Part shown: positions 1 through 58,548 of the stretch, in pieces
Numbering within the stretch: position 1 is the first letter of the stretch
Layout: the number at the start of each line of letters is the position of its first letter
Origin: Mytilus californianus
Taxonomy: Eukaryota
NCBI RefSeq assembly: GCF_021869535.1
Contig: NW_026262648.1
Location: 1,922,001 to 1,986,000 of the forward strand
Length of the DNA stretch: 64,000 nucleotides
Direction of reading: 5' to 3'
Program-made: the position numbers and the translations under genes
The notes under the pieces: model-generated
What the model was told of the DNA's origin: nothing
What the model saw: only the letters and a program-made list of their open reading frames with translations
Databases searched by the model: none

Positions 1-660
1 ATGTCCTCTCACTAAATAATTCAAAGTCAGGTGACCATGTTGAACGCATCTATCCCATCGAAATTGAAATAAAAGATGCATTAGATACATTAGATACAGT
101 TATATCTGCCTCATATCTCGAAAATGACAAGGAGGGTTGGTTGCGAAAAAAGCTTTACGACAAAAGAGATAATTTCAGCTTCCCAATTGTGATCTTTTCA
201 TTTCTATGTAGCTAAATTCCAGCAGCACCTGCATATGAGGTATATATCTCCATGTTGATACGATATTCCAGAGCTTGCATTTCCTATCATGATTTCCTTG
301 ATAGAGAGTTGAGGTTTACAAGGAAGCTATTGAACCAAGAGTTCTAAGTGAGGAAGTCGAAATCATCCCTTCGAAAATTTAACGGACGCCATCATGTGTT
401 GGTTGACCGTTATGGAATATCTGTTTCACATATGACGACTGATATGTTAAACTGTTGTAACCACAATCCCTTCGTCTTTTCCTTGAATGTGACCTACCGA
501 ATTAGATTTATCAACGAATTTGTAATAACATGAGTAACTTGACGGGTGCCACATGTTGTGTAAGATCTGCTTAGCATTCCAGAGCACCAAAAATCACCCC
601 TGGTTTTTGGTGGGGTTCGTATTGTTCATTCTTTAGTTTTCTGTGTTGTGTTTTGTGAAC
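1..660 (+). mobile_element. Penelope-like element, decayed C-terminal RT half plus 3' UTR
   Basis: Interrupted frame reads VLSLNNSK...RIYPIEIEIKD...KLYDKRDNFSFPIV...PAAPAYEVYIS.LIRYSRAC...RKLLNQ; stops and deletions present. Confidence 0.8.
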
Positions 661-2478
661 TATTGCTTGTAATCTATAGCTTTACTTGGAATTATGTATT
701 TATGGCAATTTAATGTTAATTGGAAAACACATGTCTTAAGCACCAAACATGGATGTATTTTATATCATTCAATATACAAATCTAAGGCTGATTGATTGAT
801 TTTCAAACATTTCTTTACTAACATTACGTCAAACTTAATCGCATGTGGATGTATTTTTAACAAGCAATTCCCTTAAAATCTGCGCAGTTTTTTTTTATAT
901 AAAAGTATATTGAAAGATCAATAAACAATGAAAAATGAAACAATGGCGGTAAATATTATCTTCTCCTTATTAATCTTTTACTTTAAATATGACTAGAAAC
1001 AAGTGCTAAGACAAAAAGATGTCGATTTCATAAGTAATTGGAGATAGACCATCATACGAAACTGGAATCTAGGAAAACTAACATTTCCATATTCGCTGAT
1101 ACACAATCGTGTACGTCATAAATGTTAATTATTATTGTAAATAATACTAATGAAAACATATGTAAATCATTTCAATTACTGAAAAAATTCATCCACTTAC
1201 CAAAATAGTGTAGAATAAATATCAGATTGCCGAATTTCATTTTTGTCAAGCTTATTTATCTGAAAAATAAAGTGAAGGCTATTTACGTTTTTTCACAAAT
1301 GAAAAAAAAATTATTCTTATATGACAATGTAGAATGAATCGAGACATACATAATTGATAATCAAGTGGGTGATGTGTTACAAGTGCTAATGTTATACCAG
1401 TACGAAGGCCATCATTGGCTCATCATTCCAAAATTACATTTACAGCAAACATTCATGAACATGTGTGGTTATGCTCTTTGAATACTTAAGAGTTAGATTC
1501 AATGTTTTTTTCTGTATTTCTGTAACAGATCTTTAATTAATATGTCGAAATTGACTTGTTTTCCATTTTCTTTTCTAATTTTTAAAATTTATTATTTCAA
1601 TGCTTCTTTTAAACACATATTCCTACCCGGTGTGTCCAACATGACTCCAGTGTGAATATTTTAGTTATGAAATGTACCTTAACATAATACCCTTTCTCTA
1701 TTTTGTTCCTATAAAACGAGTTAGTGTTATGACAGAAACATTAAAACACAAATAAAATAAGAACCGAAAGATTTTAAAACAAATACAATTTGCGCAGTTG
1801 ATTCAATCTATGAAACTTTGATTCTCTCGTCAAAAATATCAATATAAATGCACAATTAAGAACGTTTTCATCGGATGTGAGTTTACACTTTTAGAACATT
1901 GGAATGAAATTATGTTTGTAAATGGTGCATTATTTCCAAATGAACTTCGTTACTCTGTGCACTTATAGAGCATAAACATCTTTTGTGGAAGAATAAATCT
2001 AGACAAATTCTTAACATCGTAGAAAATATTCTTTAGCATGTCAATGAAATTTAATATCCATACAAGAAACATCACTATATTTAAAACTGTACATATGGAT
2101 CACAATATGATACCTTAAATGCATAGATACGCAAAACACATAAAATATAAACCCTACAGGTGCTTTCGATTAGTTTCAATGGTACCTCAAAACTGGTAAT
2201 ATTCAAGGAAAAAAGAAAATAAAACTTTATAAATGTCGAGCTATTCCCGATTGTGACATTTTTACGGAGTGTGAATTCGCATGACTGGTGATGCATGCAT
2301 AGCAGGTGACGCTTACCATGTTAACGCACCGCTTACCATGTTAACGCACCATTCTCGCTCATTTTTGAGTTCATGCAATTCCCTCTGTTTCTGTGTGTAA
2401 CCTCGATTTGTCTATTCCTAACCGATTTACGTGATTTGAACATCGGTGAACTATTGTTGATTTAATTTACTTGCTTAC

Positions 2479-2617
2479 GTCATTTAAAGTTCCAGTAACT
2501 TCAAAGCATTTAATACATCGGCTATAAAGGAATTCATCCACACCATCATGTTGTTTTTCCTCTAGTTGAAAATGATATCCAATACAGTTCTTGATGTGCT
2601 GGGAACACTGGACTGTA
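2479..2617 (-). CDS. Adenylyl cyclase-like protein, exon 7 (end of C1a)
   Basis: tttag|T ACA GTC...AAT GAC|gtaagc; TVQCSQHIKNCIGYHFQLEEKQHDGVDEFLYSRCIKCFEVTGTLND aligns with the AC RIHIT...YL...I.TFLI segment; phase fits exon 6. Confidence 0.8.
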
Positions 2618-2902
2618 CTAAAATTATTGAAAAAAAATTATTTGGGGTATTAATGAAATAAGAAATTATGACTACATATGACGCTGTCGTAAAAACAATA
2701 TTTCATATAAGAATAAACAAGCATCCACACATTCAATAATATTAGAATCTCCCTAGCAAAATGTGTCGACAGTTTTGTTTAATTCAAAAGACTCAAATAA
2801 AATCTTACTCGTTATTATCTGATTTTACTATTTGATTTGAAAATATTAAACCTTTTTCAATAAACATGTTTGTGAATATGAAAGCCGCAGATTGTATCTC
2901 AC

Positions 2903-3061
2903 CCATAATCCCCGGTTTCCAGTATCTGTTTTGCAATATTCAAATCTTCTCCAAAAGCATCAGCCGAAGCATGGATCTGTCCTAAAAGTGCAATCCGTAT
3001 GTCTCCTATGTGTATGCAAGCTCTAGCGTTTATATCCACTCCTTGTTTCATAGAAAATTGC
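2903..3061 (-). CDS. Adenylyl cyclase-like protein, exon 6 (C1a)
   Basis: aatag|G CAA...TAT GG|gtgaga; RQFSMKQGVDINARACIHIGDIRIALLGQIHASADAFGEDLNIAKQILETGDYG resembles VNMRVGIHSG..CGVLG..KWQFDVWS.DVTLAN.ME.GG. Confidence 0.85.
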
Positions 3062-3172
3062 CTATTTGACAAAATTGAATCATAATGATTTTAGTGATGA
3101 CAATTGATATCAATTTCGAGGTAAGTTGATAAGCTTTGCTTCTGTCACCAAATTTTACTTTATAACCGCCTC

Positions 3173-3370
3173 GATGGTCTCGTGGTAGCGAGCTGGATTC
3201 GGGGATGGGAGGTCGTGGGTTCAATCTCGGGTCGGGTCAAACAAAAGACTTGAAAATTGGTATTTACTATTTCTCCACTAAGCAGGCAGAATGTAGGAGT
3301 AAAGTAACGATTGGTCCACTCGGAGTCGGAATAATTTGTCCGGCTAGGAAGACATGTCTTCCTGCAGACT
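3173..3370 (+). mobile_element. tRNA-derived SINE (Meta/MESC-type core)
   Basis: A-box-like TGGTCTCGTGG, B-box-like GGTTCAATCTC, then GGTCAAACAAAAGACTTGAAAATTGGTATTT core; related copies at 16355 and 48602. Confidence 0.65.
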
Positions 3371-3506
3371 GATTAAACACGTTAAACAACTAATAAATAG
3401 GTTTAACAACTCGTGAGAATTGGATATCGCTTGATATCAACTCTCGTTACTTAATTTAAATAGTAATAATAAACTCGCCGAAGGTTTTATAGACAATAAT
3501 GAAAGC

Positions 3507-4187
3507 AATAAAATTGAGAATGGAAAGGGGGAATGCATCAAAGAGACAACAATCCGACCAAAGAGCAGAAAACAGCTCAACACATGCTCAAGGCCCTGAA
3601 TGAGTCTTCATCACAGCGAGAAAATCACGCACCCGGAGGCAACCTTCAGCTAGCCCCTAAACAATTATGTATACTAACTCAGCGAAAATGGACATCACAC
3701 TAATCTCCGAAACATAAATGAACCAAAATTAAAAAAACATACAAGACTAACAAAGGCCAGAGGTTCCTGACTTGGGACAGGCGCAAAAGTGCGGCGGGGT
3801 TAAACATGTTTTGTGAGATCTCAACCCTCCACCTATACCTCTAGCCAATGTTGAATAAACAAACACACAGCAATACGCACAGTAAAATTCAGTTCCAAAG
3901 AAGTCTGAGTCCGATGTTAGAATAGATAACAGAAGAAACTAAGCAAAATGACAATAATTAACATAAATTTACAAAGGACTACTAGCAGTTACTGACATGC
4001 CAGATCCAGACTTCAATTAAACTGATTTAAAGATTATGTCTTCATCATATGCAAATCAAGCACAATCCCTCCCGTTAGGGGTTTAGTATCATACCATCAT
4101 AAAATATACGAGAAGAACATAACCCGTATCACGCCAACAACTGGTTTTAGAATAAATGTGTATATTTCCGATGCAAAGACCCTATGA
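3507..4187 (-). mobile_element. Penelope-like family A, 3' UTR part; resumes at 6001-6085 after a composite insertion
   Basis: Collinear with 20946-21640, 26550-27180 and 57785-58548; broken at CCCT ATGA and resumes ATGA GCGAATC at 6001. Confidence 0.85.
4040..4115 (-). ncRNA. SECIS-like element, family A copy
   Basis: ATGA T GGTATGATACT AAA CCCCTAACGGGA GGGATTGTGCT TGAT. Confidence 0.65.
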
Positions 4188-4656
4188 GGTATAAAACCAC
4201 TAATTCATAGCCCCATTGCTTTCTATGTTAAATTCTGCAATTTCAAGCATAAATGGCTACTTTGTCTTACGTTCAAATTAAGTGGCAGTTATTTCATGTC
4301 AAAACTGTACCTTATGCTGACTTGTGCTGAAAAAATCAACATACCTTTAATTGCATATTAGAGCGTACTGGTTCCCGGAAGTTTGATAGTACAGAAACAG
4401 GAACTTCTGATCTGAACAACAGGCCAAATGAGCCCTCCTATCAAAATTTCATATACTTCTTTATTATTCAAATAAAACTTTCAACTAGGGTTCTACAGTG
4501 ATTCCAAGTCCCAAAGCTTTCATTTGATACTAAAACTACCCAAATATTCCCACTATTGACAAAGATACAGCTATGAGTAGGAACTATTTTGTTTAAAATA
4601 TGTACTACTTTCTTGTATGTTCTTTCCGACCGGGCCTGAATTAGTGGTTCTATACC
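4188..4656. mobile_element. 469-bp MITE, copy 1
   Basis: Imperfect ~25-bp TIRs GGTATAAAACCACTAATTCATAGCCC / GGGCCTGAATTAGTGGTTCTATACC. Confidence 0.85.
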
Positions 4657-11723: not shown

Positions 11724-11767
11724 ACGTCACCGATGAATCCTATGTAGACGAAACGCTCGTCTGACGT
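11724..11767 (+). ncRNA. Minimal type I hammerhead ribozyme, degenerate
   Basis: Stem I ACGTCA/TGACGT, core CCGATGA...GAAA, stem III ACG-CT-CGT, cleavage triplet GTC. Confidence 0.6.
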
Positions 11768-17775: not shown

Positions 17776-17820
17776 TGGTAGTGATGTCATAGATTTTAAC
17801 GAACGTAATCAATGAATCAC

Positions 17821-18470
17821 TGGTAAATTGTTAAATCAAGGATTTCGTTACCATAAATTACGTAAAACTTTTGCTAAGTTCTTTCATAGATACAAAGATT
17901 TAATTAGTAAATTTGGCTGTACTTGTAGAAAACTGATTAAAAACGGTATTTCACATCCTAAATTTCACGGTAATATTGTACTTAAAGCGCGGAAATCACT
18001 ATGTGATCCGTGTAAACTCATCGAACCTTTAAACAAACTTATTAGTAAAGGTTATCTAACCAATGTTGTAATTAGATCTTTGAATATAGTTTACATTGGC
18101 ACTAATATCGAGTTTGTCATCAGCAAATTAAAACATAACTAAATATGTATTTTTTTCAAGCGAGATGTATAAAGACACACCCACGTTTGTTTAGATCTAT
18201 AAAGAGGTTAAACTCCTAACTATCCTACTGTCTGTCGATACATTTATTTTTGGCATTGCACTAGTCATGTCTTCTTTGACTGTCCATGACGTTAAAATAC
18301 TAAATCCCTGGGATGTGTTTTAGTTAATTTTAGTCTCTGATGCATGATTTTTCATTATTAATTGTTTTGGCTTTTAACTAGCTGTCAGTAACTGCGAGTA
18401 CTCTCAAATCGTACTTTCTTGTTTATTTGACCTGTTGATACTAATTGTATTGCTTTTTTGTTATTTAATG
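17821..18470 (+). mobile_element. Penelope-like family B, RT C-terminus (ORF 17828-18142) plus 3' UTR
   Basis: LLNQGFRYHKLRKTFAKFFHRY...GISHP.F.GNI parallels family A LLHQGFRYHKLVKTFTKFYHRY...GISHPIFYGNI. Confidence 0.85.
18278..18335 (+). ncRNA. SECIS-like element, family B (3' GA mutated to AA)
   Basis: ATGA C GTTAAAATAC T AAA TCCCTGGGA T GTGTTTTAGT TAAT; helix I GACTG/TAGTC. Confidence 0.5.
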
Positions 18471-19643: not shown

Positions 19644-20085
19644 ATTATATAAATAACATAAAGCTGAAAGGGTGATAGAGCAGATTGTTACCCCGAGAAA
19701 ACATTGTCAACTGAGGCGAAGCCAAGGTTGACAATGTCTTTTCGAGGGGTAACAATCTGCTCTATCACCCTCTCAGATATGTGTTATTTAATTTGTTATA
19801 CTGAATGTTCTGTTATTACTGTCGATTAAGTTTTAAATTCAAAGTAATAAATTATAACGTCTTGTACATAACAACCATCCGTATTTAATAAAGCGCACAC
19901 TTGATCAAGCGTCTCCGTGAAGGGTAATAGAGTATTTGCCATAGGATAGAGTCGTATTTAATAAAGCGCACACTTAATCAAGCGTCTCCGTGAAGGGTAA
20001 TAGAGTATTTACCATAAAATAGAGTAAATTAACACCCTCGTATAAGCCAATCAAAATATTGCATTTTTACGTGAAGTATAATAAA
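19644..20085 (+). mobile_element. Palindrome-core element containing a 73-bp tandem duplication (19880-20025)
   Basis: Arms 19651-19711 and 19727-19789 are inverted repeats around TGAGGCGAAGCCAAG. Confidence 0.7.
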
Positions 20086-20875: not shown

Positions 20876-20945
20876 ATATGACCACGTTAGTTTTACCCTG
20901 GACATTTGACGCCTAATACAAATAATTTGAAAAATACTACAGGAT

Positions 20946-22395
20946 AAAATTGAGAATGGAAATGGGGAATGTGTCATGGAGACAACAACCCGACCATAGA
21001 GCAGACAACAGCCGAAGGCCACCAATGGGTCTTCAATGCAGCGAGAAACTCCCGCACCCGAAGGCGTCCTTTAGCTGGCCCCTAAACAAATATGTATACT
21101 AGTTCAGTGATAATGGACGTCATACTAAACTCCAAATTATACACAGGAAACTAAAATTAAAAATGATACAAGACTAACAAAGGCCAGAGGCTCCTGACTT
21201 GGGACAGGCGCAAAAATGCGGCGGGGTTAAACATGTTTATGATATCTCAACCCTCCCCCTATACCTCTAGCCAATGTAGAAAAAACAAACGCACAACAGT
21301 ACGTACAGTAAAACTCAGTATAAGAGAAGTCCGAGTCCGATGTCAGAATAGGAAACAAAAGAAAATAAACAAAATGACAATAATACATATATAACAACAG
21401 ACTACTAGCAGTTACTGACATACCAGCTCCAGACCTCAATTAAACTGATTAAAAGATTATGTCTTCATCATATGAATATCAGGCACAATCCCTCCTGTTA
21501 GGGGTTTAGTATTATACCGTCATAAAATATATGAGAAGAACATAACCCGTGTCATGCCAACAACTGGTTTTAGAATAAATGTGTTTAATTCCGATGCAAA
21601 GACCCTATAAGTGAATCAATATTAAAGCCAAACTATGCAATCTTTAATGACCTGACAACAGTATCGTAACTATATCCCTTCTTAATAAGTCTGTTTAAAG
21701 GTTTTGTTAGCTTTTGAGGTGAATACTGACATTTTTGTGCTTTGTAAAGAATATTACCATAAAAGATTGGATGTGAAATACCCGAACGTATAAGATATCT
21801 GCATGTTGAGTTATATTTACGAATGATGTACTTATACCGATGATAAAATTTAGTAAAATTTTTGACTAGTTTATGATATCGAAAACCCTGGTGTAATAAT
21901 TTTTTAGTAATTATACATAAATTTCTCTCGCTAAAATCTATTACGTTGTTACATACACGAGCGAATCGTACAAGTTGAGATATATAAACACCATAAGATG
22001 GTGACAAGGGAACGTCACCATCTAAAAGTGGATAATTAACGATAGAAAATGAAAAATCATCTCTTTTATCATAAATTTTTGTATTAAGCTTCCCGTTAAT
22101 GATATAGATATCAAGATCGAGGAAAGGACAGTGGTCATTGTTAGTATTTAATTAGCTTTATTTAAAGTAAGTTCAACAGGATAAATTTCTTTAGTATACA
22201 TACTGAAGTCGTCATTATTGAGAGCCAATATATCATCCAAATATCTAAAAGTATTGTTAAATTTTTGTATCAGATGTTGTTTCGATGGGTCTTTGCTGAT
22301 TTTAGTCATAAATTGTAACTCATAACAATACAAAAACAGGTCCGCAATAAGTGGTGCACAGTTAGTCCCCATTGGGAATCCAAAGGAGTAAACAT
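20946..22395 (-). mobile_element. Penelope-like family A, 5'-truncated, RT frameshifted
   Basis: FPMGTNCAPLIADLFLYCYE...FRYLDDIL (22148-22426) and SPSYGVYISQLVRFARVC (21633-22007); no C-terminal GIY-YIG. Confidence 0.9.
21463..21538 (-). ncRNA. SECIS-like element, family A copy
   Basis: ATGA C GGTATAATACT AAA CCCCTAACAGGA GGGATTGTGCC TGAT. Confidence 0.65.
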
Positions 22396-24647: not shown

Positions 24648-25805
24648 ACATGATTTTGTCCTGAATATAAGTGTAATGTTTGCCGCTGGATGTTTGGCCG
24701 CCATTAAACTATCTCATATTTTACTTTATACTAGTAGTATGCATATAACGCTTTCGATAAAAACATATTATTTTATCAAACTAAATATATATCATAACAA
24801 AGACCGGGGTTTTGTTTGAAATTATAAATAAAATGACAATAATAAAATTAATAATGACTGTGCTAAACTTCAAGGTTAATTTCTGAATTTTGGAATACAA
24901 AGTTTTTTCAAAAACAGGAAAACACTTATTATATCATCTAAACGATAATGTCAGTCAATAGACATTTTTGAAAACAGAAAAATGAAAAATAAATCAAAAT
25001 AAACAATAATGCAGGATATATTGAAGTATTTCCTCATTTTTCTACAGAAATTGTACTGGAAAGAACCTAAATAACTAATACTCAGAAAACCTTTGGTTAA
25101 GAATAGATAGAAAATTTCCGTTTACGTAGGTCGGCGTGTGTTTGGCTTTACATTGTGGTATAGTATAGAATAAGAGACATGGTAATATGGCCGTATAGGT
25201 AGGCAAGTGTTCATGTTTCCCAAATCTTACGAACGTATTTTTTTTTATAAATATGATAATAAATTAGTACTGTAGAATTTGTACCCCTGAAGCAACCCTA
25301 AGTCTAACTTTTCATTTTATTCCTGTGTCGATGTAAGAGAAGTGGTGTGAGTTGCAAGAGTTATTTTATTTCAAAGTTTTTTTGTCTGTGTGCTGTTCAA
25401 TCGAACAGGAATGACATTCACTATGTACAGAAAAAGAGCTAATTGTTTTCTGACTATGCAAGAACGAATCTTACCGCTTATGTTAAGTGTGAATTCAAAT
25501 GGCCATAAGTTCATTCTGACCAAAAATGTCCGTTATCCGTTTTATCAGAGTTCCAACGTTAAAGTCATATGTTACTTCAAAGTTGACAAAAAAAAATAAT
25601 ATATATCTTATATAACTAAATGACCAATTTGTATTATCATACACATGTACATAGACTTTTTTAAAAAGATTTTTTGTTTATGTTATCCAAATCCACAGAC
25701 AATATAGATCTACTACTATCAAATTATTGTCAATAGTTGTAAAAGTGGCGTTAAACTCCAACAATCAATCAGTCAATGTATTGTATTATATTGCATTGTA
25801 TTGTA

Positions 25806-27180
25806 TTTTTTTGTATTGCTATGAGTTACAATTTATGACAAAAATCAGCAAAGACCCATCGAAACAACATCTGATACACAAATTTAATAATACTTTTAGA
25901 TATTTGGATGATATTTTGGCTCTCAATAATGACGACTTCAGTGTGTATACTAAAGAAATTTATACTGTTGAACTTACTTTAAATAAAGCTAATACTAACA
26001 ATGACCACTGCCCTTTCCTCGATCTTGATATCTATATCATTAACGGAAAGCTTAATACTAAAATATATGATAAAAGAGATGATTTTTCATTTCCTATCGT
26101 TAATTATCCATTTTTAGATGGTGACGTTCCCTTGTCACCATCTTACGGTGTTTATATATCTCAACTTGTACGATTCGCTCGTGTATGTAACAATGTTTTA
26201 GATTTTAACGAGAGAAATTTATGTATTACTGAAAAATTATTACACCAGGGTTTTCGATATCACAAACTAGTCAAAACATTTACTAAATTTTATCATCGGT
26301 ATAAGGACATCATTCGTAAATATAGCTCAACATGCAGACTTCTTATACGTTCAGGTATTTCACATCCAATTTTTTATGGAAATATTCTTTATAAAGCACA
26401 AAAATGTCAGTATTCACCTCTGAAGCTGACAAAACCTTTAAATAGACTTATTAAGAAGGGATATAGTTACGATACTGTTGTCAGGTCATTAAAGATTGCA
26501 TATTTTGGCGTTAATATTGATTCACTTATAGGGTCTTTGCATCGGCACTAAACACATTTGTTTAAAAACCAGTTGTTGGCATGACACGGGTTATGTTCTT
26601 CTCATATATGTTATGATGGTATGATACTAAACCCCTAACGGGAAGGATTGTGCCTGATATTCATATGATGAAGACATAATCTTTCAATCAGTTTAATTGA
26701 AGTCTGGAGCTGGCATGTCAGTTAACTGCTAGTAGTCTGTTGTTATTTATGTATTATTGTCATTTTGTTTATTTTCTTTGGTTACATCTTCTGACATCAG
26801 ACTCGGAATTCTCTTGAACTGAATTTTAATGTGCGTATTGTTATGCGTTTACTTTTCTACATTGGCTAGAGGTATAGGGGGAGGGTTGAGATCTCATAAA
26901 CATGTTTAACCCCGCCGCATTTTTGCGCCTGTCCCAAGTCAGGAGCCTCTAGCCTTTGTCAGTCTTGTTTTATTTTTAATTTTAGTTTCTTGTGTACAAT
27001 TTGGAGTTTAGTATGGCGTTCATTATCACTGAACTAGTATATATATTTGTTTAGGGGCCAGCTGAAGTACGCCTCCGGGTGCGGGAATTTCTCGCTGCAT
27101 TGAAGACCTGTTGGTAACCTATTGCTGTTGTCTGTTCTATGGTCGGGTTGTTGTCTCTTTGACACATTCCCCATTCCCAT
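25806..27180 (+). mobile_element. Penelope-like family A, 5'-truncated, open RT C-terminal half (to 26551) plus 3' UTR running into the gap
   Basis: LYCYELQFM...FRYLDDIL...CPFLDL...TKIYDKRDDF...YGVYISQLVRFAR; ORF ends with no endonuclease domain. Confidence 0.92.
26598..26673 (+). ncRNA. SECIS element (type II-like), family A
   Basis: ATGA at 26613; helix II GGTATGATACT/AGGATTGTGCC (10 of 11 pairs); AAA 26629-26631; mini-stem CCC-TAAC-GGG; TGAT 26655-26658; helix I CATAT/ATATG and CTTC/GAAG. Confidence 0.75.
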
Positions 27181-27444
27181 NNNNNNNNNNNNNNNNNNNN
27201 NNNNNNNNNNNNNNNNNNNNNNNNNNNNNNNNNNNNNNNNNNNNNNNNNNNNNNNNNNNNNNNNNNNNNNNNNNNNNNNNNNNNNNNNNNNNNNNNNNNN
27301 NNNNNNNNNNNNNNNNNNNNNNNNNNNNNNNNNNNNNNNNNNNNNNNNNNNNNNNNNNNNNNNNNNNNNNNNNNNNNNNNNNNNNNNNNNNNNNNNNNNN
27401 NNNNNNNNNNNNNNNNNNNNNNNNNNNNNNNNNNNNNNNNNNNN
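27181..27444. other. Assembly gap (264 N)
   Basis: Run of N. Confidence 1.
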
Positions 27445-27474: not shown

Positions 27475-27550
27475 ATGTATTGTAGTACGTTGTATTGTAT
27501 TGTATTGTATTGTATTGTTTTGTATTGTATTGTATTGTATTGTATTGTAA
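27475..27550. repeat. (TATTG)n microsatellite; related tract at 25776-25815
   Basis: Direct reading. Confidence 0.95.
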
Positions 27551-28161
27551 TTTGCAATTCATTACAATATAAAGCAATACAATGCAAAACAATACACTAG
27601 AGGGACAATATATACTACCAGAAGAGGGACCTTGTGTATTTCTAAATATATGGGTAAGATTTTGATGTCTTGACTTTGTCACGTCACTAGAGTAGGCAAA
27701 GACAATAAAAAAACATCCATTGTAACCAAATCAAAGAATACGTCACCACAATAATGCTTGGTAAAGTTCTTTCGTGTCCATTACCACAGTTCTTTGCAAC
27801 GCTAAATCTTGCTTGGTTTGGCGAAAAGATGTGTTTATTCAAACAAAAATGTCTTTTCCGTTATTTAGGAATTTAAGAAATTTTTAAAAGTGTAGATTTT
27901 CATGTCGGGGGATCCATGCATGGCACGAGACGCTTATCCTATTGACGTATCGGGTCTCGTTCATTTTGGAGTTCATGCGATTTCTCCAGATTTTGTTTGT
28001 TACCTTAAATTGTCTTCTTAATCAATTCATTAGACTTGTACATTGGAAACCTAATGTTGCCTTTATTTACACCCACCTCAATACACAAAATATTGACACA
28101 TCAAATATCGTACGCTCGAAAATTCGAAAAACGAGCATATGTTCAAGAATCATGCAAAAAT

Positions 28162-47489: not shown

Positions 47490-48215
47490 ATTAGAGTATA
47501 CTTATCAATCCTTTAAATAAACTTTTTTCTAAAATGTTACCAATTCAACACTGTAATTAGATCTTTGAATATTGTTTTTTATTGGTATTAATATTGATTT
47601 TGTTATCAATAAATCAAAATCAAACTAAATATTATTTTTATATACATATGCACATTCATGGCTCTTCAATCTGTCGATACCTGTATCTTGGCATTACACA
47701 CGGTCATGTTTTCTCTGATAGTTAATGACGCCTTTACACTAAATACATTGGATTTTGGATGTGTACTGATTGATATTTTAGTCTTAGATACATGATCTTT
47801 TTTTTATTAGTTGTTATTGGCTTTAAACTAGCTGTCAGTAACTGCGAGTACTCTCAGATCTGTACTTAGTGTCTTTTTGTTATGGGAATGTTAAAGTACC
47901 CTGCCACGTCCACTTTGTGTTTTTTGTTAGATGTATTTCTACTTGTATCCATCTGATGAGTTAAGCCTTTTTCAACTGATGTTTATAGTATGTTCTTATG
48001 TTGTACTGTTACACCACTGTCCCAGGTTAGGGGAGGGTTGGCGCCTTCAAACTAGTTTAACCCCGCTACATTCTGTATGTGCCTGTCCCAAGTCAGGAGC
48101 CTGTAATTCCGTAGTTATCGTTTGCTGCTGTGTATCATATTTGTTTTTCGTTCATTATTTTGTACATGAATTAGGCCGTTAGTTTTCTCGTTTGAATTGT
48201 TTTACATTTGTCATT
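47490..48215 (+). mobile_element. Penelope-like family C, RT tip plus 3' UTR, antisense in JmjC intron 1
   Basis: NTVIRSLNIVFIGINIDFVINK resembles the family B end; shared 3' UTR motifs. Confidence 0.7.
47716..47783 (+). ncRNA. SECIS-like element, family C
   Basis: ATGA C GCCTTTACAC T AAA TACATTGGATTTTGGA T GTGTACTGAT TGAT; helix II has several mismatches. Confidence 0.45.
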
Positions 48216-57784: not shown

Positions 57785-58548
57785 ATAAAATTGAGAATGG
57801 AAATGGGGAATATGTCAAAGAGACAACAACCCGACCAAAGAGCAGATAACACCCGAAGGCCATCAATGGGTCTTCAACGCAGCGAGAACATCCCGCACCC
57901 GGAGGTGGTCCTCAGCTGGCCCCTAAATAAAATTGTGTACTGGTTCAGTGAAAATGGACGTCACACTAAACTCCAAAACATATAGATGAACTAAAATTAA
58001 AAAACATACAAGACTAACAAAGGCCAGAGGCTCCTGACTTAGGACAGGCACAAAAATGCGGCGGGGTTAAACATGTTTTGTGAGATCTCAACCCTCCCCC
58101 TAAACCTCTAGCCAATGAAGAATAAAGAAACACATAGCAATACCCACAGTAAAACTCAGTTTAAAAGAAGTCCGAGTCCCATGTCAGAATAGGTAACAAA
58201 AGAAACTAAGCAAAATGACAATGATACATAAATTAACAAAGGACTATACTAGCAGTTACTGACATGCCAGCTCCAGACCTCAATTAAACTGATTGAAAGA
58301 TTATGTCTCCATCATATGAAAATCAGGTACAATCCCTCCCGTTAGGGGTTTAGTATTATACCATCATAAAATATATGAGAAGAATATAACCCGTATCATG
58401 CCAACAACTGGTTTTAGAATAAATGTGTTTATTTCCGATGCAAAGACCCTATGAGTGAATCAATATTAATACTAAAATATACAATCCTTAATGATCTGAC
58501 AACAGTATCGTAACTATATCCCTTCCGAATAAGTCTGTTTAAAGGTTT
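57785..58548 (-). mobile_element. Penelope-like family A, 3' fragment abutting a SINE
   Basis: KPLNRLIRKGYSYDTVVRSL...IDSLIGSLHRK* plus 3' UTR. Confidence 0.88.
58307..58382 (-). ncRNA. SECIS-like element, family A copy
   Basis: ATGA T GGTATAATACT AAA CCCCTAACGGGA GGGATTGTACC TGAT. Confidence 0.7.

What the first reader, a model, noticed from the sequence alone, without database searches (positions are those of the whole stretch)
26598..26673. Complete SECIS element in the 3' UTR of a Penelope-like retrotransposon: candidate selenocysteine-recoding TE
Seen: about 60 nt after the RT stop (26551) lies AUGA-U, an 11-bp helix with 10 pairs, AAA, a CCC-UAAC-GGG mini-stem, then UGAU, closed by a lower helix. 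This is the eukaryotic type II SECIS layout. The RT is C-terminal with no following GIY-YIG. Established (from memory): Naiad PLEs have an N-terminal EN and C-terminal RT, and Sec-encoding Naiads were reported in spiders and clams (Craig et al. 2021). Inference: this very abundant family also recodes UGA, possibly in a mussel lineage, which would tie transposition to selenium supply. Limit: no in-frame UGA is visible because all copies lack the 5' EN/CxC region; the Cys codons in the retained RT are TGT/TGC.
Basis: partly seen in the sequence, partly recalled or inferred. Interest (0 to 1): 0.9.

Follow-up and report, generated by a model that had tools for sequence, protein, structure and literature searches.

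The report
Selenocysteine-coding Naiad retrotransposon with SECIS
The hairpin is a genuine selenocysteine-insertion (SECIS) signal at the tail of a broken copy of a young, abundant Naiad retrotransposon whose full-length copies carry four UGA "stop" codons exactly where relatives have cysteine. The mechanism was published in 2021 for clams and spiders, and here it turns up in what looks like a mussel genome.

Summary
Window 26603-26667 matches Rfam SECIS_1 over its full length (31.7 bits, gathering score 35, local E 5e-4). It has AUGA, a 10-bp helix, unpaired AAA, a 3-bp mini-stem and UGAU, and starts 51 nt after the TAA stop. The window copy is 5'-truncated and keeps only about the last 247 codons.

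Full-length copies (~3.96 kb) elsewhere in this genome encode one ORF of 1002 codons, N-terminal GIY-YIG endonuclease then RT. It has TGA at codons 55, 86, 97 and 522.
- All 33 copies examined have all four TGAs.
- 18 of 27 independent 5' halves are open for all 689 codons read, with no other stop.
- The four sites align to near-invariant Cys in 34-46 full-length relatives.
- Sister families swap Cys and TGA at the DKA+8 and CxC sites.
- dN/dS is about 0.07-0.15 on both sides of every TGA.
- The SECIS covaries across families.
- The genome has two tRNA-Sec genes.

This is the mechanism reported by Craig et al. 2021 for two clams and two spiders. It is a new member of a known kind. Differences are the probable Mytilus host, a mini-stem (type II) SECIS and a different set of Sec sites. 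The scan had already noted the same phenomenon on other DNA of this genome. Translation itself was not shown.

The parts
25806..27180 (+). 5'-truncated copy of the young Naiad family, covering element positions about 2577-3949 of about 3961. By the length of other copies the last ~12 nt would lie inside the N mask 27181-27444, which I did not read.
   Evidence: 99% identity to the full-length copy in L031. Copies are truncated at many different 5' points, and several begin at the window copy's own breakpoint.
25806..26551 (+). Remnant of the single ORF, about codons 756-1002: RT motif C (FRYLDDIL) and the thumb region, ending in TAA at 26549-26551. The mechanical ORF 25727-26551 runs 79 nt into flanking DNA.
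   Evidence: Relatives found at E down to 5e-290.
26603..26667 (+). SECIS element with a mini-stem (type II layout). Helix I 26603-07/26663-67; AUGA 26613-16; helix II 26618-27/26645-54; AAA 26629-31; mini-stem 26632-34/26640-42; UGAU 26655-58.
   Evidence: RF00031 31.7 bits over model 1-64. Identical to the majority variant of the family, 28 of 38 copies. Covariation shown.
20944..22381 (-). Older 5'-truncated copy (93% identity, element 2532-3961) with its SECIS at 21464-21538.
   Evidence: RF00031 29.9 bits; model R1 89.6 bits.
57785..58548 (-). Older fragment (88% identity, element 3201-3961) with its SECIS at 58308-58382.
   Evidence: RF00031 36.1 bits, above gathering; R1 93.8 bits.
3508..4188 (-). 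Oldest fragment (84% identity, element 3294-3961) with its SECIS at 4041-4115.
   Evidence: R1 84.6 bits.
17784..18341 (+). Fragment of a second, divergent Naiad family (69% DNA identity in the RT C-terminus). Its SECIS-like hairpin at 18272-18341 has a mutated 3' core (UAAU instead of UGAU).
   Evidence: R1 33.1 bits, and it aligns with the SECIS of L072.

Best explanation
The hairpin is the SECIS element of a recently active Naiad (N-terminal-endonuclease Penelope-like) retrotransposon family that encodes a selenoprotein. The full-length element is about 3.96 kb: a 313-nt leader, one ORF of 1002 codons, a TAA stop and a ~640-nt 3' UTR. The ORF has UGA at codons 55, 86, 97 and 522. I infer the following mechanism. 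The SECIS, starting 51 nt after the stop, recruits the host Sec machinery (SBP2, eEFSec, Sec-tRNA). All four UGAs are then read as selenocysteine, giving an EN-RT protein with Sec in the Zn-finger-like motifs of the endonuclease and 8 residues after the DKA motif. Without recoding, translation would end at codon 55. The window copy is a dead 5'-truncated insertion that kept only the RT tail, the SECIS and the 3' UTR, so its SECIS is a passenger. Shown here: the anatomy, the TGA-to-Cys correspondence, purifying selection across the UGAs, SECIS covariation and the host tRNA-Sec genes. Inferred: actual Sec insertion and dependence on selenium.
For: 1. SECIS. RF00031 matches over its full length at 31.7 bits, and the same element scores 36.1 bits in a sister copy. 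In 10 SECIS from several families, 89% of cells are paired against 33-48% when the partners are slid. Ten of 18 pairs have changes on both sides, and 0 of 500 shuffles reach the observed values. AUGA and AAA are invariant. The 3' core keeps its GA in all but the decayed copy at window 18272 (UAAU).
2. In-frame TGAs. 33 of 33 copies have TGA at all four sites. 18 of 27 independent 5' halves are open for all 689 codons read, with stops only at codons 55, 86, 97 and 522, all TGA. One longer copy is open over its whole retained ORF with only these four.
3. TGA aligns with Cys. In 46 full-length relatives the four columns are Cys in 34/35, 41/41, 42/42 and 46/46 of the aligned residues.
4. Sister families. 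At 77-80% identity, L067 and L068 have intact ORFs of 1002 and 1000 codons. They have Cys at DKA+8 but TGA at the first CxC Cys. Families at 61-75% identity have TGA at DKA+8.
5. Selection. dN/dS against L067 is 0.11, 0.15, 0.065, 0.078 and 0.073 for the segments before, between and after the UGAs.
6. Age and abundance. Copies are 98-100% identical, with 458-3009 first-look candidates per query.
7. Host capacity. Two tRNA-Sec genes score 79.6 and 77 bits against a cut-off of 47.
8. RNA. Reads from two runs cover the whole element.
9. Precedent. The same UGA positions plus a SECIS were published for Naiads of clams and spiders (PMC8557442).
Against: There is no direct evidence of translation or Sec insertion. 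The majority SECIS variant scores below Rfam's gathering score, and 0 of 20 copies passed it with default filters. The covariation alignment was fitted to my own model, so it leans towards the structure. dS is saturated (1-2.4), so the ratios are rough. RNA reads lie on both strands and rise towards the 3' end, as expected from read-through of many truncated copies, so they do not show an autonomous sense transcript. Pfam finds no domain in the family's own pieces; the domain assignment rests on motifs and on relatives.
Confidence: 0.85

Rival explanations
1. The TGAs are true stops. The family would be a non-autonomous or dead lineage copied in trans by Cys-type Naiads, and the SECIS-like hairpin would be a relic or a coincidence.
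For: There is no translation evidence. Most copies are 5'-truncated. The SECIS scores below Rfam's gathering score in the majority variant.
Against: No TAA or TAG appears in 689-1002 AT-rich codons in most copies. dN/dS is about 0.07-0.15 downstream of each TGA. The TGAs sit only on invariant Cys columns. Intact ORFs with the same pattern occur in several diverged families. The SECIS covaries.
Confidence: 0.06
2. The UGAs are read through without Sec, for example by near-cognate Cys or Trp insertion or general leaky termination. The hairpin would serve another role, such as a K-turn protein-binding site or the 3'-end recognition site for the element's own RT.
For: PLE RTs must recognise their own 3' ends. 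The hairpin is part of the upstream partial tandem copy (pseudo-LTR) that precedes many full-length copies. Both roles could coexist.
Against: The invariant features are exactly the SECIS determinants: AUGA, the GA of the 3' core, unpaired AAA 12 nt from the core, and a helix length maintained by compensatory changes. The hairpin is found together with UGA-containing ORFs in every family for which enough 3' flank was available and a hit was found. Four efficient non-Sec readthroughs in one ORF have no precedent known to me.
Confidence: 0.06
3. The hairpin at 26603-26667 is a chance SECIS look-alike in AT-rich repeat DNA.
For: The whole-window E-value is only 0.025, and the score is below the gathering score.
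Against: It sits at the same position after the stop in all subfamilies, at 84-99% identity, and in sister families with compensatory changes. The fold z-score is -3.65.
Confidence: 0.02

Closest known systems
[quoted passage not shown] 2021, PMC8557442)
   Same: N-terminal GIY-YIG EN and C-terminal RT. Three or four in-frame UGAs at the Cys preceding GIY-YIG, the first Cys of CCHH and the Cys 8 aa after DKA. SECIS just downstream of a UAA/UAG stop. Bivalve host.
   Different: This family adds a UGA at the second Cys of the CX4CxxC finger, which the paper reports only for a spider family. The SECIS starts 51 nt after the stop (the paper gives 1-21 nt, or overlapping the stop). It has an apical mini-stem (type II layout), whereas the paper calls all four of its elements type I. 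The host is probably a Mytilus mussel, not a clam. I could not compare sequences directly because the paper's supplementary files are not held.
Naiad_Sdum and Naiad_Smim, the Sec Naiads of Stegodyphus spiders (same paper)
   Same: UGA in the CX2-5CxxC finger, before GIY-YIG and at DKA+8, plus a SECIS in the 3' UTR.
   Different: The host is an arthropod. The spider elements have no UGA in CCHH. The paper reports that the IFD is missing from chelicerate Naiads. The origin of Sec coding is presumably independent.
Cys-type Naiads of bivalves, including Mytilus galloprovincialis (same paper), and the full-length relatives P0129-P0270 found here
   Same: The architecture and motifs match: KR-rich block, CxC, GxKY, DKA and YLDD. 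So do pseudo-LTR tandems, adjacent inverted truncated copies, high copy number and absence of a hammerhead.
   Different: They have Cys codons where this family has TGA. The paper describes a 5-aa insert in the CX2-5CxxC finger of mussel Naiads, and this family lacks it (C-x4-U-xx-C).
Eukaryotic SECIS, Rfam RF00031 (mini-stem form)
   Same: AUGA / GA non-Watson-Crick core, a 10-bp helix II, an unpaired AAA, a 3-bp mini-stem with a 5-nt loop, and a lower helix.
   Different: The majority variant scores 3.3 bits below the curated cut-off. Helix II is rich in G-U pairs and has one A.G mismatch.

Membership tests
Eukaryotic SECIS (RF00031) | Core quartet: 5' AUGA opposite 3' (N)GA(N) | tested here: met
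   AUGA at 26613-16 and UGAU at 26655-58. AUGA is invariant in all 10 aligned elements. The GA of the 3' core is kept in all but the decayed copy at window 18272.
Eukaryotic SECIS (RF00031) | Unpaired AA(R) about 10-13 nt above the core, on top of helix II | tested here: met
   AAA at 26629-31, 12 nt after AUGA. It is invariant across families.
Eukaryotic SECIS (RF00031) | Helices I and II maintained by base pairing | tested here: met
   89% of cells are paired against 33-48% when slid. 10 of 18 pairs have double changes. 0 of 500 shuffles reach the observed values. The alignment was fitted to the model.
Eukaryotic SECIS (RF00031) | Score at or above Rfam's gathering cut-off (35 bits) | tested here: not met
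   This copy and the family majority score 31.7 bits. 0 of 20 copies pass. The sister copy at 58313-58377 scores 36.1 bits. This fails the curated threshold but does not affect the structural features.
Eukaryotic SECIS (RF00031) | Lies in the 3' UTR of an mRNA with in-frame UGA | tested here: met
   It starts 51 nt after TAA. Full-length copies have four in-frame TGAs, 1.5-2.9 kb upstream.
Eukaryotic SECIS (RF00031) | Binds SBP2 and directs Sec insertion | not testable with these tools
   Needs reporter, binding or 75Se experiments.
Naiad clade of Penelope-like elements | N-terminal GIY-YIG EN with CX2-5CxxC and CCHH motifs, upstream of the RT | tested here: met
   The motifs C-x4-U-xx-C, U before SIIY, and U-NKPG-C ... 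IQYVGETG are all present. Relatives aligned over this region hit PF01541 above its cut-off at their N-terminus and RVT_1 at their C-terminus. Pfam does not hit the family's own pieces.
Naiad clade of Penelope-like elements | Linker with KR-rich block, CxC motif and GxKF/Y | tested here: met
   RKNRSHGRRKNRNQRK, TSCNCSNSEYIY and SKGPKYRP are present. The CxC columns are Cys in 44-45 of 46 relatives.
Naiad clade of Penelope-like elements | DKA motif in place of DKG | tested here: met
   VPADKAANN is present and conserved in relatives.
Naiad clade of Penelope-like elements | 5' truncation, partial tandem copies (pseudo-LTR) and adjacent inverted truncated copy | tested here: met
   5' ends vary. 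An upstream partial copy covering element 2898-3961 precedes many full-length copies. L033 has an inverted copy and L035 a tandem copy.
Naiad clade of Penelope-like elements | No canonical hammerhead ribozyme | tested here: met
   Rfam at E<=1 on L031 4400-8900 finds only the SECIS.
Naiad clade of Penelope-like elements | Insertion bias for (TA)n microsatellites | tested here: inconclusive
   The 3' flanks of about 12 independent insertions are diverse and show no obvious microsatellite. The sample is small.
Naiad clade of Penelope-like elements | IFD insertion between RT3(A) and RT4(B) | not tested
   Not measured.
Selenoprotein-encoding Naiads (Craig et al. 2021) | In-frame UGAs at the Cys preceding GIY-YIG and at the Cys 8 aa after DKA (stated for all four published families) | tested here: met
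   These are codons 86 and 522. The sister families in L067 and L068 have Cys at DKA+8.
Selenoprotein-encoding Naiads (Craig et al. 2021) | Sec actually incorporated into the protein | not testable with these tools
   As far as the text I read shows, this was not demonstrated experimentally in the 2021 paper either.

The most novel reading that the evidence does not exclude
Sec use may be a fast-evolving, selected trait across a whole clade of bivalve Naiads. Cys and Sec swap site by site between sister families: DKA+8, the first CxC Cys and the second CX4CxxC Cys. That would make transposition depend on selenium supply. The thousands of transcribed 5'-truncated copies would scatter working SECIS elements through the genome, where they could seed new host selenoproteins or compete with host selenoprotein mRNAs for SBP2.
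Probability: 0.15. Interest if true: 0.75.

Novelty: new member of a known kind. Interest (0 to 1): 0.4.

Why it matters
Selenoprotein-encoding transposons are known from one paper covering four families. This finding adds a very young, high-copy family in a probable Mytilus genome and a set of sister families. It adds one Sec site not listed in that paper, the first Cys of the CxC motif, seen in sister families. It adds direct covariation support for the SECIS and evidence of purifying selection across the UGAs.

In practice, gene callers split these ORFs at TGA or translate TGA as Trp. P0119 has W at two TGA codons. TE and selenoproteome annotation in bivalves will therefore miss or mislabel these elements, and SECIS scans of such genomes will be flooded with TE-borne hits.

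Tried and rejected
- Pfam on the window ORF and on the two long pieces of the family ORF gave no RT or GIY-YIG hit. PDB sequence search gave nothing. Domain identity therefore rests on motifs and on relatives.
- Rfam at gathering threshold on 20 copies gave 0 hits. The majority SECIS sits 3.3 bits under the cut-off.
- Rfam found no SECIS at E<=5 in L072-L074, and none in L069 at E<=1. My own model recovered one in L072 only. L069 and L071 have almost no 3' flank.
No tally of fully intact copies was made, so 5' and 3' halves were assessed separately.
- The supplementary files of Craig et al. are not held, so there is no sequence comparison with Naiad_Mmer or Naiad_Scon.
- Organism names of the sequencing runs are coded. 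The host identity rests on assembly statistics: 175 contigs, 1.65 Gb and coordinates up to 141.9 Mb here, against 176 scaffolds, 1.65 Gb and a largest scaffold of 142.4 Mb for Mytilus californianus (PMC9710001). The M. edulis assembly of the same size has 1,119 scaffolds.
- No (TA)n target preference was seen.
- RNA reads do not settle the strand or autonomous transcription.
- The N stretch 27181-27444 was left unread. The automatically cut locus L001 spans it. Only its coordinates appeared in a BLAST table; I did not print or use its letters.

Full report
**1. The observation**

- The ORF ends with TAA at 26549-26551.
- A lower helix pairs 26603-26607 with 26663-26667.
- AUGA lies at 26613-26616.
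- A 10-position helix pairs 26618-26627 with 26645-26654. It has nine standard pairs, three of them G-U, and one A.G.
- Unpaired AAA lies at 26629-26631.
- A CCC/GGG mini-stem with loop CUAAC follows, then UGAU at 26655-26658.

Rfam's SECIS_1 model (RF00031) matches 26603-26667 over all 64 model positions at 31.7 bits. The gathering score is 35. The E-value is 4.8e-4 on the 1.2-kb stretch and 0.025 on the whole window. The RNA fold is -27.2 kcal/mol with z = -3.65, and none of 200 shuffles folds as well.

Two further SECIS_1 matches in the window are copies of the same repeat. One is at 58313-58377(-), 36.1 bits, above gathering. The other is at 21469-21533(-), 29.9 bits.

**2. What the window copy is**

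The repeat starts sharply at window 25806 and runs into the N mask at 27181. Copies elsewhere in the genome are 98-100% identical. They are truncated at many different 5' positions and share one 3' end.

The longest copies share about 3.96 kb. The window copy therefore holds only element positions about 2577-3949. That is roughly the last 247 codons of the ORF, the SECIS and most of the 3' UTR.

Four older fragments of the same or a related family lie in the window:
- 3508-4188(-), 84% identity;
- 20944-22381(-), 93% identity;
- 57785-58548(-), 88% identity;
- 17784-18341(+), a second family.

None reaches the 5' half.

**3. The full-length element**

Reading individual copies, without building a consensus, shows a 313-nt leader and an ATG. 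One frame of 1002 codons follows, ending in TAA, with a ~640-nt 3' UTR.

The frame contains these features, in order:
- a C-x4-[TGA]-xx-C finger;
- [TGA] before SIIY;
- LLT-[TGA]-NKPGC...IQYVGETG, the GIY-YIG core with its CCHH finger;
- a KR-rich block;
- the CxC motif (TSCNCSNSEYIY);
- GPKY;
- VPADKAANNIIIV-[TGA];
- RT motifs including FRYLDDIL.

This is the Naiad architecture as defined by Craig et al. 2021.

Full-length relatives found with the 424-aa piece between the third and fourth TGA carry Pfam GIY-YIG at their N-terminus, above the cut-off, and RVT_1 at their C-terminus. Pfam does not hit this family's own pieces.

Other Naiad traits are present:
- a partial tandem copy sits upstream of many full-length copies, forming a pseudo-LTR;
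- L033 has an abutting inverted truncated copy and L035 has a tandem copy;
- no hammerhead ribozyme is found in the element.

**4. The UGAs**

- All 33 copies covering the sites have TGA at each of the four.
- Of 27 independent 5' halves, 18 are open for all 689 codons covered. Their only stops are at codons 55, 86, 97 and 522, and all four are TGA.
- One 5'-truncated copy is open over its whole retained ORF with only these four.
- The other copies carry private frameshifts or stops. For example, L031 has a 2-nt deletion that most genomic copies and most RNA reads lack.
- In an alignment with 46 full-length relatives (27-37% identity), the four columns are Cys in 34/35, 41/41, 42/42 and 46/46 of the aligned residues.

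**5. Sister families**

- Proteins 77-80% identical in the RT part (P0002-P0004) have Cys at DKA+8.
- Two of their contigs, L067 and L068, were read. They hold intact ORFs of 1002 and 1000 codons. Both have TGA at the same three endonuclease sites and, in addition, at the first Cys of CxC.
- Families at 61-75% identity (L070-L074) have TGA at DKA+8. Where the contig reaches that far, they also have TGA before GIY and at the first CCHH Cys.
- A family at about 50% identity (L066) has TGA at the first CxC Cys and at DKA+8. The database protein shows W at both places.

Cys and TGA thus replace one another site by site within a clade whose ORFs stay open.

dN/dS between this family and L067 is 0.11 for codons 1-54, 0.15 for 56-96, 0.065 for 98-521, 0.078 for 523-689 and 0.073 for the last 480 codons. 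dS is saturated, so the ratios are rough. Selection has nevertheless acted on the protein downstream of every UGA.

**6. The SECIS across families**

The window's SECIS is identical to the family's majority variant, in 28 of 38 copies. Rfam also finds a SECIS at the corresponding place after the stop in L067 (28.0 bits), L068 (25.0), L070 (28.8) and L066 (25.0).

I built a covariance model from six elements. It recovers four more elements: window 4041-4115, window 18272-18341, window 47710-47792 and L072 3147-3216.

On the ten aligned elements:
- 89% of cells form standard pairs, against 33-48% when the partners are slid;
- ten of 18 pairs show changes on both sides;
- no shuffle out of 500 reaches the observed values.

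AUGA and AAA do not vary. The GA of the 3' core is lost only in the decayed copy at window 18272. The caveat is that this alignment was fitted to the model.

**7. Host and expression**

The genome has two tRNA-Sec genes at 79.6 and 77 bits, against a cut-off of 47.

The assembly statistics match those published for Mytilus californianus. Here there are 175 contigs, 1.65 Gb and coordinates up to 141.9 Mb on one contig. The paper gives 176 scaffolds, 1.65 Gb and a largest scaffold of 142.4 Mb (PMC9710001). This is an inference, not an identification.

Runs under four organism labels hold 75-82% of the element's 31-mers.

RNA reads from two runs cover the whole element. Depth rises from a few-fold in the 5' half to hundreds-fold at the 3' end, on both strands. 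This shows presence in RNA libraries. It does not show an autonomous sense transcript or translation. None of the 40 best-supported differences listed falls on a TGA codon, but 243 more differences were not shown.

**8. Mechanism**

Established knowledge of eukaryotic Sec decoding is that a 3'-UTR SECIS, SBP2, eEFSec and Sec-tRNA together recode UGA. The anatomy here implies that the element's mRNA is translated through four UGAs into an EN-RT selenoprotein. Translation would otherwise stop at codon 55.

The SECIS starts 51 nt after the stop. It lies about 1.5 kb from the last UGA and about 2.9 kb from the first.

The window copy cannot make protein. Its SECIS is carried along because target-primed reverse transcription starts at the 3' end and often stops early.

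**9. Comparison and novelty**

Craig et al. 2021 (PMC8557442) described exactly this for two clam and two spider Naiad families. They reported three or four UGAs at the Cys before GIY-YIG, at DKA+8, in CCHH (clams) or in CX2-5CxxC (spiders). Their SECIS elements were called type I and lay 1-21 nt after the stop, or overlapped it.

The differences here are:
- the probable mussel host;
- the combination of Sec sites (clam-type plus the second CX4CxxC Cys);
- a mini-stem SECIS starting 51 nt after the stop;
- in sister families, a Sec codon at the first CxC Cys, a site the paper does not list.

No later paper on the subject is in the held library. The scan's own notes already report the same phenomenon on other pieces of this genome.

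Noticed in passing
window 11724-11767 (+): Hammerhead_1 (RF00163) match at 26.8 bits, below the gathering score of 34, E 0.026. It may be the ribozyme of a canonical, hammerhead-bearing Penelope-like element or satellite. It is unrelated to the Naiad, which has none.
   Followed up: no
L066 3001-5337; proteins P0119, P0111, P0081: Public protein catalogues show W at DKA+8, and in P0119 also at the first CxC Cys. In the DNA behind P0119 both codons are TGA. The gene caller apparently read TGA as Trp, so Sec-type Naiads are hidden in databases as Trp variants.
   Followed up: partly
L067 (ORF 1002 codons), L068 (ORF 1000 codons), L070, L069: Sister Naiad families in metagenome contigs have TGA at the first Cys of the CxC motif. 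The 2021 paper does not list this Sec site. L067 and L068 ORFs are otherwise uninterrupted.
   Followed up: partly
L037-L065, just upstream of element position 1: A conserved ~57-nt linker joins the 3' end of the upstream partial tandem copy to the start of the full-length copy in most loci. It may be the element's true 5' end or the 'tail' extension described for PLEs.
   Followed up: no
G000:C154:27755505-27807263: A tandem array of at least 50 identical tRNA-like genes with a 728-bp period. Each scores 42.8 bits to the tRNA-Sec model, below the cut-off of 47, so it is probably another long-arm tRNA type. The two real tRNA-Sec genes are at C132:34106546 and C1:48003347.
   Followed up: no
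window 27476-27600: Short-period simple repeat next to the N mask. It produces several spurious miRNA-family matches on both strands (MIR5512, MIR5998, mir-33, mir-2013).
   Followed up: no
window 19663-19777 (+): MIR7504 model match at 52.5 bits, below the gathering score of 83. It is probably a hairpin of an inverted-repeat transposon rather than a miRNA gene.
   Followed up: no
runs X15-X20: Runs under four different organism labels hold 75-82% of the element's 31-mers. Nearly identical copies of this young family are therefore shared by several, presumably closely related, species labels. Whether this reflects recent common ancestry, hybridisation or transfer was not examined.
   Followed up: no
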